Of a stretch of 64,000 nucleotides of DNA, positions 214 through 64,000 are shown piece after piece. The stretch spans positions 304,707-368,706 of the forward strand of contig NW_019218067.1 in the NCBI RefSeq assembly GCF_002571385.2, read 5' to 3'. Under the pieces are notes generated by a model. That model was not told the origin of the DNA, made no database searches, and was given only the letters and a program-made list of their open reading frames with translations. Each line of letters begins with the position of its first letter. Position 1 is the first letter of the stretch. The position numbers and the translations under genes are program-made. This DNA comes from Stylophora pistillata. Lineage: Eukaryota.

Positions 214-12581
<12,368 letters not shown>

Positions 12582-55849: not shown

Positions 55850-61837
<5,988 letters not shown>

Positions 61838-62129
61838 GTGAGATAGTGTAAATATATACCAATAAAACAAAAAAAAAAGCGTTTGTCATGTCTTTCATGA
61901 ACTACATTTTGCTAAAGAATATTATTTTGGGAAGTTCTGAGCAATTTTTGTTCTTACATGTATGTGCAAGCATAATTTATCGAAGGTTCTGTCTGCGGTT
62001 TAATGTAGCAGATCGCTAGTGTAAATTTTGAAAAAAAGTTAAAATTCAGATTCAGTTTTATTCGGGTTCTCGGGTGTCACGCATTGTTTGACTCTCACGA
62101 TTGTGTGACAAATTGGAATTTTGCTTTCA

Positions 62130-62282
62130 TGACGTCAAGCATACGCCACTAAATATTTGTCTCCAACTGTACTAATTGGTAACGAGCATTCATGACGTAA
62201 CTTTTGCGTCACTAATTTCTCATTAAATTAGCCTAATAATCAACAGTTAATTAGTTAATTGATCGTTACGTTTATGACGTGT
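62130..62282 (+). promoter_or_regulatory. Cluster of CRE-like sites upstream of the protamine-like gene
   Basis: TGACGTCA 62130, TGACGTAA 62193, TGCGTCA 62205, TGACGTGT 62275. Confidence 0.55.
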
Positions 62283-62374
62283 CCCCACTTGATTAAGTCA
62301 TTTGCTGCAAGTCTCCAAGCTGTTCAGACGTACTTTCTGCGCTCCGTGAAAAAATTCGCCAGAACAGTTAAAAA

Positions 62375-62977
62375 ATGGCCAAAGCTAAAACCCGACGTGT
62401 TGCTAAAAAGTCAGCATTAGTCAAGAAGAAGAAGGCAGCCAAGAGGCCTGCTCTTACAAGCCAAAAGGTATTAGCTGCCATCGCCGCCTTGAAAGATCGT
62501 AATGGCTCAAGCGCGAAAGCAATTATGGCCTACCTCCACGCGCAACGTGGAACAAAGAAAGTTACACCTTTTCAAGTGAGAATCGCGTTGGCGCGCGCCG
62601 TCAAAGACAAATCACTGGTGAACAATGGAGCTTTGTTTAAAGTTGTTGCTGCTTCCAGCAAGTCGCGGTCGCGCTCCAAATCGCGTTCCAAATCCCGCTC
62701 CAGATCACGCTCTCGGTCAAGATCAACCTCGAAGACTAGATCCCGTTCTCGATCCCGATCAAGGTCTAAGAGTCCGGGCAGGAAATCGGTGAAGAAAGTC
62801 ACCAAGAAGGCTAAAAAGGCGAGAAAGGCCAAGAAAGTGATCCGAAAGCGCAGGGCCCCGGCTAAAAGACGCGTCGGAAAGAGGAGATACTACAAAGGAA
62901 CTAAGAAGGCGACCAAGAGAGCCGCACCCAAGATAAAGCGCAAGATTCGCAGGAGGCGACGATCCGCCCGCAAGTGA
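62375..62977 (+). CDS. Histone H1-derived protamine-like (PL-type) basic protein, intronless, with an RS-repeat block
   Basis: H1 globular-like segment (VLAAIAALKDRNGSSAKAIMAYL...ALARAVKDKSL), (RS/KS)n tract and Arg/Lys-rich tail ending KRKIRRRRRSARK; good start context aaaaATGG. Confidence 0.85.
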   Translation: MAKAKTRRVAKKSALVKKKKAAKRPALTSQKVLAAIAALKDRNGSSAKAIMAYLHAQRGTKKVTPFQVRIALARAVKDKSLVNNGALFKVVAASSKSRSRSKSRSKSRSRSRSRSRSTSKTRSRSRSRSRSKSPGRKSVKKVTKKAKKARKAKKVIRKRRAPAKRRVGKRRYYKGTKKATKRAAPKIKRKIRRRRRSARK

Positions 62978-63040
62978 ACTGACTGACTTTATAAAAACAA
63001 AACCGCCATGTCTTTTGCTTTCCCTTCTAAGAACACTCAA

Positions 63041-63075
63041 AGACTTTTAAGTCTCTACAAACTCTCTTAAGAGAG
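63041..63075 (+). terminator. Variant histone-type 3' stem-loop plus purine-rich downstream element
   Basis: AGACT-TTTA-AGTCT at 63041-63054 preceded by CAA; AAGAGAG at 63069-63075. Confidence 0.45.
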
Positions 63076-64000
63076 CAAACGCCTAAAACGCTGAAGAACT
63101 GTTAGTAAGCGAAGTTTACAGGATCCTCTGTTTTGTCATCTTTCCTTTTTTTTAACTCAAAGGATTGTACATACAAGAAAAATGATTAAACAGTGAAGGC
63201 GAAGACTTGTTTGGTGTTTGATTTCCTTTCTATAACAGGGGAAGAAAAGTGATGATTTTTACGTAGAAAAGACGGGATCTAACTTTTCCTTAACGAAGAA
63301 GCGACAACAATCAAAATTTTTAATTAGGAGGCACTTATGTTATAAAGCATGAGTGGGATACTTTTAAGTCGGCGCGCCCGTGGCCTTTTTTTGCGCGCAC
63401 CTTGATTTTGTGCGCATTTGGAACCGTCCGCCAAAATGCTGCCATAGACAGAAACTTTAAGTAGTTTTGATCGTGTATTTGTTGTAAATTAAAAACACAA
63501 GGTTGCGCGCGCGTTAATTCTGTGCCATTCAACGCGTCCCAGATGCTGCCCGAGGCGTCTTCATTGAAGGACTTCGTCCTAAGTTTCCGTGGGAAAATTT
63601 TTACGAACTCATTTGGATCTGCTTCAATTTCCACGAAGCTTAATATTTGTGTTTTTTTCAAACGATAGTTTTAGGAAAGTTTCTGATGAATCGATGTCAA
63701 TACTGCACGTGCACTTAACAAGCGCGTGATTTGCAATGTTGTCACAGTCTGTGTTACAATTGGCCAAAGATCGACGGCGAGACTTAGTAAGCAAACGGCC
63801 AGAGGTAAAAAAATAAATAAATAAAATCATAGTTAGTTGAGGGGACTATGATCAAATCTGTAGTGGAATTTAATACGCCCAGAGCCTGCGCATATAAGTG
63901 CAACAGGGTTCACTGTTCTTCAAAGACGATGCTTTGAAAAGGTCACACTAGTTTACGTAGTTCCATCCGTTTATCTAGTTTTGTTATGGTAAATTTCGTT

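What the first reader, a model, noticed from the sequence alone, without database searches (positions are those of the whole stretch)
62375..62977. Protamine-like H1 gene nested on the same strand in a Beclin-1 intron
Seen: BECN1 exon 12 ends FCLPYR|gtgag at 61837, and I found no exon for the conserved C-terminus (..WTKALK..) before 64000. The intronless 200-aa ORF therefore sits in that intron. The protein has an H1-like globular region with a shortened wing (SLVNNGALFKV instead of GxGAxGSFKL), an internal RS block and an Arg-rich tail. Known: PL-type sperm proteins derive from H1 and RS tracts are SRPK substrates. Inference: a sperm nuclear basic protein on the H1-to-protamine path. Same-strand nesting could interfere with full-length BECN1 transcripts when it is expressed.
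Basis: partly seen in the sequence, partly recalled or inferred. Interest (0 to 1): 0.8.

Follow-up and report, generated by a model that had tools for sequence, protein, structure and literature searches.

The report
Arg-rich H1-like gene inside Beclin-1 intron
A coral gene for an unusually arginine-rich, H1-type chromatin protein sits inside an intron of the autophagy gene Beclin-1, and has stayed there since corals and sea anemones split. It is probably a sperm DNA-packaging protein, but sperm expression was not tested here.

Summary
ORF 62375-62977 (+) encodes a 200-aa, pI 12 protein. It has a linker-histone winged helix (Pfam E 8e-8) whose wing loop is 5 residues shorter than in canonical H1, a 41-residue Ser-Arg/Lys block, and a K/R tail ending in a near-invariant RRRRRSARK.

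RNA contigs from four polyA libraries splice Beclin-1 from 61837 to 64015. The gene therefore lies on the same strand inside a 2177-nt Beclin-1 intron. This is the third-from-last intron, not the last.

The gene is a real, independent, single-copy unit:
- It has its own conserved promoter, with a CRE at about -100 in every ortholog.
- It has a poly(A) signal and no histone stem-loop.
- Transcript contigs are about 0.94 kb.
- dN/dS is 0.16.

The same nesting occurs in four other coral-type contigs and in the sea anemone Actinia tenebrosa. There NCBI's automatic annotation calls the relative "protamine-like protein".

One library holds Beclin-1 but no contig of this gene, so expression is not constitutive.

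Sperm specificity remains an inference. It rests on Arg enrichment, fast evolution and 1990s biochemistry of sea-anemone sperm H1-like proteins. There is no evidence that the nesting disturbs Beclin-1.

I file it as a new member of a known kind. The same scan separately noted the CRE cluster, and a second RS-bearing H1 elsewhere in this genome.

The parts
61787..61837 (+). Beclin-1 (BECN1) coding exon ending ...[17 protein letters not shown]; donor AG|GTGAG
   Evidence: Translation. RNA joints 2721->3043 and 3092->5270 of L026, where window = L026 + 58743. Exon 94-100% identical in orthologous contigs.
61838..64000 (+). BECN1 host intron. It runs on to 64014, just past the window end, for 2177 nt in all.
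   Evidence: GT..AG joint skipping 2177 nt in runs X6, X12 and X21. Loose end ATGGAAAAAG in X4. The next exons were found in L002 and the extended contig.
62099..62374 (+). Promoter and 5' leader of the nested gene. This is the only conserved non-coding block upstream.
   Evidence: blastn conservation starts at 62099/62100 in three orthologs. Multiple alignment shows shared blocks.
62130..62137 (.). Palindromic CRE, TGACGTCA
   Evidence: Aligned CRE present in orthologs.
62193..62211 (.). CRE-like pair: TGACGT at 62193-62198 and CGTCA at 62207-62211
   Evidence: In orthologs both are full ACGTCA/TGACGT sites.
62275..62280 (.). CRE-like TGACGT at -100 from the ATG. Its position is kept (-99 to -101) in all six genomic orthologs, including the sea anemone.
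   Evidence: alignment.
62290..63233 (+). Approximate transcript of the nested gene: a 944-nt contig in polyA run X6. The 934-nt contig of a close relative corresponds to 62334-63305.
   Evidence: table 8, record 19. L025 alignment. Contigs cannot fix the exact ends.
62375..62977 (+). Intronless CDS, 200 aa plus stop: the H1-like, Arg-rich protein
62375..62455 (+). N-terminal Lys-rich arm (aa 1-27), starting MAKAK/MAKAR in all orthologs
62456..62650 (+). Linker-histone winged helix (aa 28-92): helices 29-39, 47-56 and 65-77, then a tight hairpin 81-84/87-90. The wing loop is 5 residues shorter than in canonical H1.
   Evidence: Pfam PF00538. Alignment. AlphaFold model with pLDDT 83-87. Foldseek top hits are H5, H1.0, H1.4 and H1x globular domains.
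62651..62773 (+). Ser-Arg/Lys block (aa 93-133). It is followed at the start of the tail by the SKSPGRKSVK motif, invariant in the five coral orthologs, which fits the CDK/SPKK-type S-P-x-R pattern.
   Evidence: TRF finds only a weak 12-nt period and the Ser and Arg codons are mixed, so it is not a recent slippage array.
62774..62974 (+). K/R-rich C-terminal tail (aa 134-200; 21 Lys, 17 Arg), ending in a near-invariant RRRRRSARK (RRRRRSSRK in the most distant ortholog)
63088..63122 (+). Conserved 3'UTR block (ACGCTGAA...TTAGTAAGCGAAGT); role unknown
63185..63190 (+). ATTAAA poly(A) signal. It aligns with AATAAA in the orthologs, 121-208 nt after their stop codons.
   Evidence: Transcript present in polyA-selected libraries. 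No Histone3 stem-loop.

Best explanation
This is an independent, intronless, single-copy gene with its own promoter and poly(A) site. It is nested on the sense strand in a 2.2-kb intron of Beclin-1.

It encodes a specialised linker-histone derivative with four modules: a Lys-rich N-arm, an H1/H5-type winged helix with a shortened wing, a Ser-Arg block plus one SP-x-R site, and a K/R tail.

Most likely (inferred, not shown) it is a protamine-like (PL-type, H1-derived) sperm nuclear basic protein of hexacorals. On this reading it is made from a polyadenylated, replication-independent mRNA in male germ cells. The winged helix and basic arms bind DNA, and the protein helps replace or supplement somatic H1 and nucleosomal histones during sperm chromatin condensation. 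Phosphorylation of the RS/SP block would mask charge during deposition, and its removal would allow tight packing, as described for protamines and sperm histones.

The nesting itself is ancient: it is shared by stony corals and a sea anemone. It is probably just locked in, because a gene inside an intron cannot easily be moved without damaging its host.
For: Shown here:
- The ORF carries a Pfam linker-histone domain.
- The predicted fold is three helices plus a hairpin, with H5/H1.0/H1.4 globular domains among the top structural matches.
- A 5-residue wing deletion is shared by the whole family.
- Arg is 17-26% and Lys 16-22%, against Arg 1.5-3% and Lys about 32% in the same genome's stem-loop-type canonical H1s.
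- The family forms a clade apart from canonical H1 (94/89 support).
- A profile search of 1.84 billion proteins gave only 6 hits below 1e-10.
- The Beclin-1 intron is spliced around the gene in polyA RNA.
- The gene has its own 0.94-kb contigs in polyA libraries, and 10 RNA runs hold it.
- Run X21 has a Beclin-1 contig at depth 34 but no contig of this gene.
- No histone stem-loop was found here or in any ortholog. The same scan did find one at four canonical H1 genes and at the RS-N-terminal H1.
- A poly(A) signal sits at a conserved position.
- The promoter is conserved, with a CRE at -100 in all orthologs, and holds the window's densest TGACGT cluster.
- dN/dS is 0.16 against a close relative.
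- The protein is 43-61% identical between contigs whose flanking Beclin-1 exons are 94-100% identical.
- The nesting is conserved in four coral-type contigs and in Actinia tenebrosa, whose copy NCBI names 'protamine-like protein'.

From the literature:
- Anthozoans are described as containing protamine-like SNBPs (PMC5011920).
[quoted passage not shown] 1995, cited in PMC11607694).
Against: - No tissue- or stage-resolved expression data were reached. Presence in whole-colony polyA libraries fits colonies carrying spermaries but does not prove it.
- Contigs show presence only. The absence in X21 may be low expression rather than none.
- The Actinia name is an automatic annotation, not an experiment.
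- The 1995/96 anemone protein sequences could not be compared, because those papers are not in the library.
- CRE sites are common promoter elements and are not diagnostic of germline expression.
- Arg enrichment also occurs in non-sperm linker histones such as H5, which was the nearest ESM-Atlas feature cluster.
Confidence: 0.55

Rival explanations
1. It is a replication-independent linker-histone variant of another cell state: an H1.0/H5-like differentiation H1, an oocyte or embryonic H1, or an H1 of some specialised somatic cell type. It would compact or silence chromatin there, not in sperm.
For: - The mRNA is polyadenylated and has no stem-loop, as for H1.0/H5.
- The nearest ESM-Atlas feature clusters are Histone H5.
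- The transcript is present in many adult-colony libraries from 10 studies.
Against: - Oocyte and embryonic H1s are typically less basic and more acidic (general knowledge). This protein has 1% Asp+Glu and pI 12.
- H1.0/H5 keep the full wing, whereas this family has lost five wing residues.
- The rapid divergence is typical of reproductive proteins.
- The only named relative is called protamine-like.
Confidence: 0.27
2. It is an RS-domain nuclear protein working in RNA metabolism (speckle or nucleolar, SR-protein-like), with the winged helix used as a nucleic-acid-binding module.
For: - The RS block is long (aa 93-133).
- Weak hits to SR splicing factors (E 1e-5 to 1e-3) and to the SR region of coronavirus nucleocapsid (23.6 bits, below the cut-off of 30).
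Against: - Those hits cover only the low-complexity block.
- There is no RRM or other RNA-binding domain.
- The Actinia relative has no RS block but keeps the winged helix and the Arg-rich tail. The RS block is therefore an addition seen in the coral-type orthologs, not the core of the family.
Confidence: 0.07
3. It is not a separate gene. Either it is an alternative terminal exon or intronic polyadenylation product of Beclin-1, or it is a decaying retrocopy of an H1 gene that landed in the intron.
For: - It lies on the same strand as the host.
- One contig (X4, 61861-63323) runs from the 5' part of the intron through the ORF.
Against: - No splice joint enters the ORF (table 5).
- X4 also covers most other introns, which points to pre-mRNA or DNA carry-over.
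- Two transcript-like contigs start downstream of the conserved promoter.
- Promoter, CDS and poly(A) signal are conserved from corals to a sea anemone, with dN/dS 0.16.
Confidence: 0.04

Closest known systems
Actinia tenebrosa XP_031572941.1, 'protamine-like protein' (NCBI automatic annotation; P0020)
   Same: - Starts MA(R/K)AK.
- Its linker-histone winged helix has the same short wing (ALIKRGTFFKV).
- It has an Arg-rich tail ending in an Arg run and a poly(A) signal.
- CREs lie at -99 and -120.
- It lies on the same strand inside the annotated Beclin-1 gene.
   Different: - It is only about 33% identical.
- It has no Ser-Arg block and no SKSPGRK motif.
- The exact host intron cannot be fixed, because two N gaps flank the gene. 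These were not filled.
Sperm H1-like / PL proteins of sea anemones (Urticina crassicornis, Anthopleura, Metridium; Rocchini et al. 1995, 1996, as cited in PMC11607694 and PMC5011920)
   Same: They are anthozoan, H1-derived, highly basic proteins described as the major sperm chromosomal proteins. This genome likewise has two specialised H1 genes carrying RS blocks: this one, and the stem-loop H1 at L007.
   Different: Those are biochemical entities.
PL-I type sperm nuclear basic proteins of bivalves, tunicates and other invertebrates
   Same: They have an H1 winged-helix core flanked by Lys/Arg-rich arms, intermediate between H1 and protamines (general knowledge; PMC5011920 background).
   Different: No specific sequence relationship was found: the profile search gave only generic H1 hits beyond the cnidarian family. 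The short wing and the RS block are features of this family that were not compared with PL-I sequences.
Histone H5 / H1.0
   Same: They are Arg-enriched, replication-independent, polyadenylated linker histones of terminally differentiating cells. H5 is the nearest ESM-Atlas feature cluster, and H5/H1.0 are top structural matches.
   Different: They keep the full wing (GxGAxGSFK), have much less Arg and no RS block, and are not germline-specific.
Hydrozoan and sea-urchin sperm H2B variants with SPKK repeats (PMC5011920, PMC9903204); vertebrate protamine P1 with RS phosphorylation
   Same: They are basic repeats carrying Ser phospho-acceptor sites in sperm chromatin proteins. Here the counterpart is one SP-x-R site plus the RS block.
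   Different: They have a different protein scaffold (core histone, or small protamines without a globular domain). Phosphorylation of the coral protein is untested.

Membership tests
Linker histone H1/H5 family (Pfam PF00538) | Sequence match to the globular-domain profile above the curated cut-off | tested here: met
   32.8 bits against a cut-off of 22.4, E 7.9e-8, residues 30-83. This is much weaker than the same genome's canonical H1s at 83-108 bits.
Linker histone H1/H5 family (Pfam PF00538) | Three-helix winged-helix fold | tested here: met
   AlphaFold model: H29-39, H47-56, H65-77, hairpin 81-84/87-90, pLDDT 83-87. Foldseek top matches are H5, H1.0, H1.4 and H1x globular domains, with TM 0.6-0.8 normalised by target and probability 1.00, though E > 1e-3.
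Canonical (somatic, replication-dependent) H1 | Full wing loop (TKGxGASGSFK), Lys/Ala/Pro-rich tail with about 1-3% Arg | tested here: not met
   There is a five-residue wing deletion. Arg is 18.5% and Lys 21.5%, against 1.6% and 32% in canonical H1s. The family forms a separate clade.
Canonical (somatic, replication-dependent) H1 | Histone 3' stem-loop instead of poly(A) | tested here: not met
   No Histone3 match in the window or in 6 orthologous loci. The same scan found it at L003-L007. The transcript is in polyA-selected libraries.
Protamine-like (PL-type, H1-derived) sperm nuclear basic proteins | H1-type globular core flanked by highly basic arms with raised Arg | tested here: met
Protamine-like (PL-type, H1-derived) sperm nuclear basic proteins | Expression restricted to male germ cells; protein present in sperm nuclei | not testable with these tools
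   Only whole-colony Logan contigs were available. The transcript is present in 10 RNA runs and absent from some runs of the same studies. No tissue labels were available.
True protamines (P-type) | Small (well under 100 aa), Arg-dominated, no globular domain | tested here: not met
   200 aa, 18.5% Arg, with a folded winged helix.
SR splicing-factor family | RRM domain(s) plus a C-terminal RS domain | tested here: not met
   No RRM in the Pfam scan at E <= 1. Similarity to SR proteins is confined to the RS block.
Nested (intron-hosted) gene | The host intron is spliced around a gene with its own promoter and 3' end | tested here: met
   Joint 61837->64015. Conserved promoter and poly(A) signal. 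Separate 0.94-kb contigs.

The most novel reading that the evidence does not exclude
The half-billion-year association may be functional rather than merely locked in. In spermatids, firing of the nested promoter and use of its poly(A) site on the sense strand would cut Beclin-1 transcription short. That would yield no Beclin-1, or a Beclin-1 lacking the last 53 residues of its membrane-binding domain. Sperm chromatin condensation would then be coupled to a switch in autophagy. A cAMP/CRE input would be shared with the CREM-driven protamine genes of mammals.
Probability: 0.06. Interest if true: 0.75.

Novelty: new member of a known kind. Interest (0 to 1): 0.45.

Why it matters
Anthozoan sperm were shown biochemically in the 1990s to be packed by specialised H1-like proteins. 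In the literature I could search, no gene-level description of them exists. The only named relative found among 5.8 billion proteins is one automatic annotation.

This locus gives a concrete, testable candidate gene family for hexacoral sperm chromatin. It has a clear anatomy: a short-wing H1 fold, an RS/SP phospho-cassette and an Arg-rich tail. That places it on the proposed H1-to-protamine path in a non-bilaterian.

It is also an example of a sense-strand nested gene kept in one host gene since corals and sea anemones diverged. Its promoter architecture is conserved too, which makes it useful for studying how nested genes and their hosts coexist. If it is sperm-specific, it would also be a practical molecular marker of male reproductive state in corals.

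Tried and rejected
- **Histone stem-loop.** Two hairpins after the stop (AGACTTTTAAGTCT, CTCTCTTAAGAGAG) looked like a histone-type stem-loop. Rfam gives no Histone3 hit even at E 10, and the first hairpin is broken in the 90%-identical relative. Rejected.
- **Full-length protein word search.** It was swamped by RS-block words. Repeating it on residues 1-95, and with the Actinia protein, found nothing new.
- **Exact look-up.** The protein is absent from the 15-billion collection. So is the genome's other H1 (L007), so this says nothing about whether the gene is annotated.
- **Wider context.** P0131 had no DNA available. The P0127 contigs (L028/L029) show no Beclin-1 exons within reach. P0018 sits on a short contig.
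- **Literature.** No paper links Beclin-1 to a nested histone gene. The coral gonad transcriptome and coral cell-atlas papers and their held supplements do not mention a protamine-like or H1 marker.
- **RS cassette exchange.** DNA similarity between this gene's RS cassette and that of L007 is only about 70% over 60-80 nt of low-complexity sequence. There is no evidence of recent gene conversion.
- **Rest of the host intron.** It is not conserved between species, so no second nested element is indicated.
- I did not fill the N gaps in the Actinia locus.

Full report
**What is there**

The window is G000:C283:304707-368706. The genome behaves as a stony coral's. RNA runs that hold the locus are labelled 'coral metagenome' or one coded organism. 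The closest relatives come from coral-reef metagenome assemblies.

ORF 62375-62977 (+) exists exactly as reported. It is the longest ORF in the region. It encodes 200 aa of 22.5 kDa, pI 12, with 1% acidic residues.

**Host gene**

Pfam APG6 and APG6_N searches of the whole assembly place Beclin-1 on the same contig and strand, from before 58119 to past the window end.
- The exon ...[17 protein letters not shown] ends at 61837 with AG|GTGAG.
- The next coding exon (MEKGKIHDSSGNGGAFSIK) begins at 64015.
- The last exon (IQFNSEEQWTKALKF...TEK*) lies at about 64497-64602. Both are just outside the window.

I laid Logan contigs of four polyA RNA libraries on C283:363450-369440 (L026; window = L026 + 58743).
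- Every Beclin-1 intron appears as a GT..AG joint, identical in all four runs up to the exon that ends at 61837.
- This includes 61837->64015, skipping 2177 nt, in three runs. The fourth run has a loose end reading the first ten bases of the next exon.

The ORF is therefore inside a spliced Beclin-1 intron on the sense strand. The one correction is that two coding exons follow, not one. I searched the exons one by one by reference and did not build a joined Beclin-1 model.

**The nested gene is a real, separate transcription unit**
- In run X6 a 944-nt contig covers 62290-63233.
- A 934-nt contig from a relative that is 90% identical in protein (L025) corresponds to 62334-63305. It carries no intron flank.
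- No joint enters the ORF.
- Ten runs on record as RNA hold at least 86% of the sampled words, and all ten are polyA-selected libraries.
- Run X21 has a 2457-nt spliced Beclin-1 contig at the same depth as X6 (34), but nothing over 61944-63543. Three runs of the same studies hold almost none of the gene's words. Expression is therefore uncoupled from the host and not constitutive. Contigs show presence better than absence.

Between species, only 62099-62995 (promoter plus CDS) and a 35-nt 3'UTR block (63088-63122) of the intron are conserved.

The promoter block carries the densest TGACGT/ACGTCA cluster of the 64-kb window: 4 of its 15 hexamer hits fall within 200 bp. In the orthologs there are up to six such hexamers. 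One CRE sits at -99 to -101 from the ATG in all six genomic orthologs, the sea anemone included.

An AATAAA or ATTAAA lies 121-208 nt after the stop in every genomic ortholog; here it is at 63185-63190.

Rfam finds no histone 3' stem-loop in the window at E <= 10, nor in any orthologous locus. The same scan found it at four canonical H1 genes of this genome and at the RS-N-terminal H1. That is the positive control.

The gene is single copy.

**The protein**

Pfam Linker_histone matches residues 30-83 at 32.8 bits, against a cut-off of 22.4. The genome's nine ordinary H1 genes score 83-108 bits.

An AlphaFold model of residues 1-95 shows three helices and a tight beta-hairpin, with pLDDT 83-87 in the domain. 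Foldseek's best PDB matches include H5, H1.0, H1.4 and H1x globular domains. The related MORF and KAT6A winged helices also rank high, and MORF ranks first. Probability is 1.00 and rmsd about 2-4 A, although E-values stay above 1e-3 for so short a domain.

Aligned with the genome's own H1s, all family members lack five residues of the wing loop: TKGVGASGSFKV in canonical H1 against NN-----GALFKV here. They also lack the HPPY start of helix 1.

After the domain come two further modules.
- A block of 41 residues holds 20 Ser, 13 Arg and 5 Lys. The motif SKSPGRKSVK follows it and is invariant in the five coral-type orthologs. It fits the S-P-x-R/K pattern of CDK/SPKK sites; that reading is my own.
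- A tail of 21 Lys and 17 Arg ends in a near-invariant RRRRRSARK. The most distant coral-type ortholog has RRRRRSSRK.

The RS block uses mixed Ser and Arg codons, and TRF sees only a weak 12-nt period. It is therefore kept at the protein level.

The weak Pfam hit to coronavirus nucleocapsid is below its cut-off. The SR-protein hits cover only this block.

**Family and evolution**

A profile of the N-arm plus domain was searched against 1.84 billion representatives. Only 113 hits fell below 1e-3 and 6 below 1e-10.

| Contig | Protein identity | Identity of the flanking Beclin-1 exons |
|---|---|---|
| L022 | 61% | 100% and 95% (last exon not on the contig) |
| L024 | 56% | 100%, 79%, 100% |
| L017 | 55% | 100%, 84%, 100% |
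| L018 | 43% | 94%, 89%, 97% |

All four place the gene on the same strand between the same two Beclin-1 exons. Against the 90% relative, dN/dS is 0.16. The protein is therefore constrained, but evolves far faster than its host.

More distant members (P0018, P0020, P0027) share the short wing and the Arg-rich tail but not the RS block.

P0020 is XP_031572941.1 of the sea anemone Actinia tenebrosa, named 'protamine-like protein' by NCBI.
- It lies on the same strand inside the annotated 448-aa Beclin-1 gene.
- It sits between the exon encoding FDQAMVAFLDCLQQ and the last exon.
- Two N gaps hide the nearest exons. I left them unfilled.

A maximum-likelihood tree of the domain separates this family from the genome's canonical H1s (support 94/89; one change in 100% of bootstrap trees). 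Long branches inside the family are unresolved.

**Interpretation**

Shown:
- A conserved, expressed, polyadenylated, replication-independent, Arg-enriched H1 derivative with a truncated wing.
- It is nested in Beclin-1 in both stony corals and a sea anemone, so the arrangement predates their divergence.

Inferred: that it is a PL-type sperm nuclear basic protein. The inference rests on five points.
- The Lys-to-Arg shift.
- The rapid evolution.
- The phospho-acceptor cassette.
- The non-constitutive expression.
- Literature saying that anthozoans contain protamine-like SNBPs, and that two specialised H1 proteins are the major sperm chromosomal proteins of an anemone (PMC5011920; Rocchini et al. 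1995b and 1996 as cited in PMC11607694).

This genome also has a second RS-bearing H1 (L007, C468). It has an N-terminal RS block followed by SKSPSSK, a full wing, a Lys-rich tail and a histone stem-loop. The pair may correspond to the 'two specialised H1s', but that is a guess.

The CRE-rich promoter recalls CREM-dependent protamine genes of mammals (my knowledge). CREs are too common to count as evidence.

I put the SNBP reading at about 0.55. Another kind of replication-independent H1 variant is at about 0.27, and other readings are below 0.1 each.

**Host interference**

All four libraries splice the host intron correctly, including those holding the nested transcript. Bulk tissue cannot show what happens in the cells that express the nested gene. 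The idea is untested rather than refuted.

**Novelty**

The kind is known: H1-derived sperm-type basic proteins, in anthozoans too. One relative already carries an automatic 'protamine-like' name.

As far as the searchable literature goes, three things are new.
- The gene-level anatomy in corals.
- The RS/SP cassette and short wing as family traits.
- The deeply conserved sense-strand nesting in Beclin-1, with a conserved promoter.

Noticed in passing
L007 (G000:C468:220141-223353), gene on the minus strand, 1866-1201: A second specialised H1, 221 aa. It has an N-terminal RS block (RSRSRSKSRSRSRSRSRSRSKSPSSK), a canonical full-wing globular domain, a Lys-rich tail, an AAACACA H1-box-like upstream element, and a Histone3 3' stem-loop at 1135-1180. 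A 261-aa relative (P0010) carries SKSPGRK, the same motif as the nested gene.
   Followed up: partly
L026:5526-5556 (equivalent to 64269-64299, just past the window end, in the next Beclin-1 intron): A 31-nt stretch has very high summed depth in all four RNA runs (57-549). The loose ends on both sides differ between contigs. It is probably a short repeat or a word shared with abundant unrelated transcripts.
   Followed up: no
window 63401-64000 (3' part of the host intron): RNA contigs cover parts of this unconserved stretch in all four runs, including X21, which lacks the nested gene. One X12 contig runs unspliced into the next exon. This suggests retained intron or pre-mRNA rather than another gene.
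   Followed up: partly
L012 (G000:C268:6221-9388), ORF 1429-1674 (+): A truncated H1-like ORF of 81 aa, ending inside the wing. It is probably an H1 pseudogene or fragment.
   Followed up: no
P0017 (746 aa) and P0019 (486 aa), origin unknown: These proteins carry 4-7 tandem H15-type winged helices and match the family profile at 1e-29 and 1e-11. They are multi-domain linker-histone-like proteins, or fused gene calls.
   Followed up: no
L013 (G000:C90) and L016 (G000:C271): Two proteins of about 180 aa each, with a weak linker-histone-like winged helix in the C-terminal half and a second conserved N-terminal module. They are unrelated to the nested gene.
   Followed up: no
window 63088-63122: A 35-nt block of the nested gene's 3'UTR (ACGCTGAA...TTAGTAAGCGAAGT) is conserved across coral orthologs while the rest of the UTR is not. 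It could be a translational-control element. It shows no covariation to test.
   Followed up: partly
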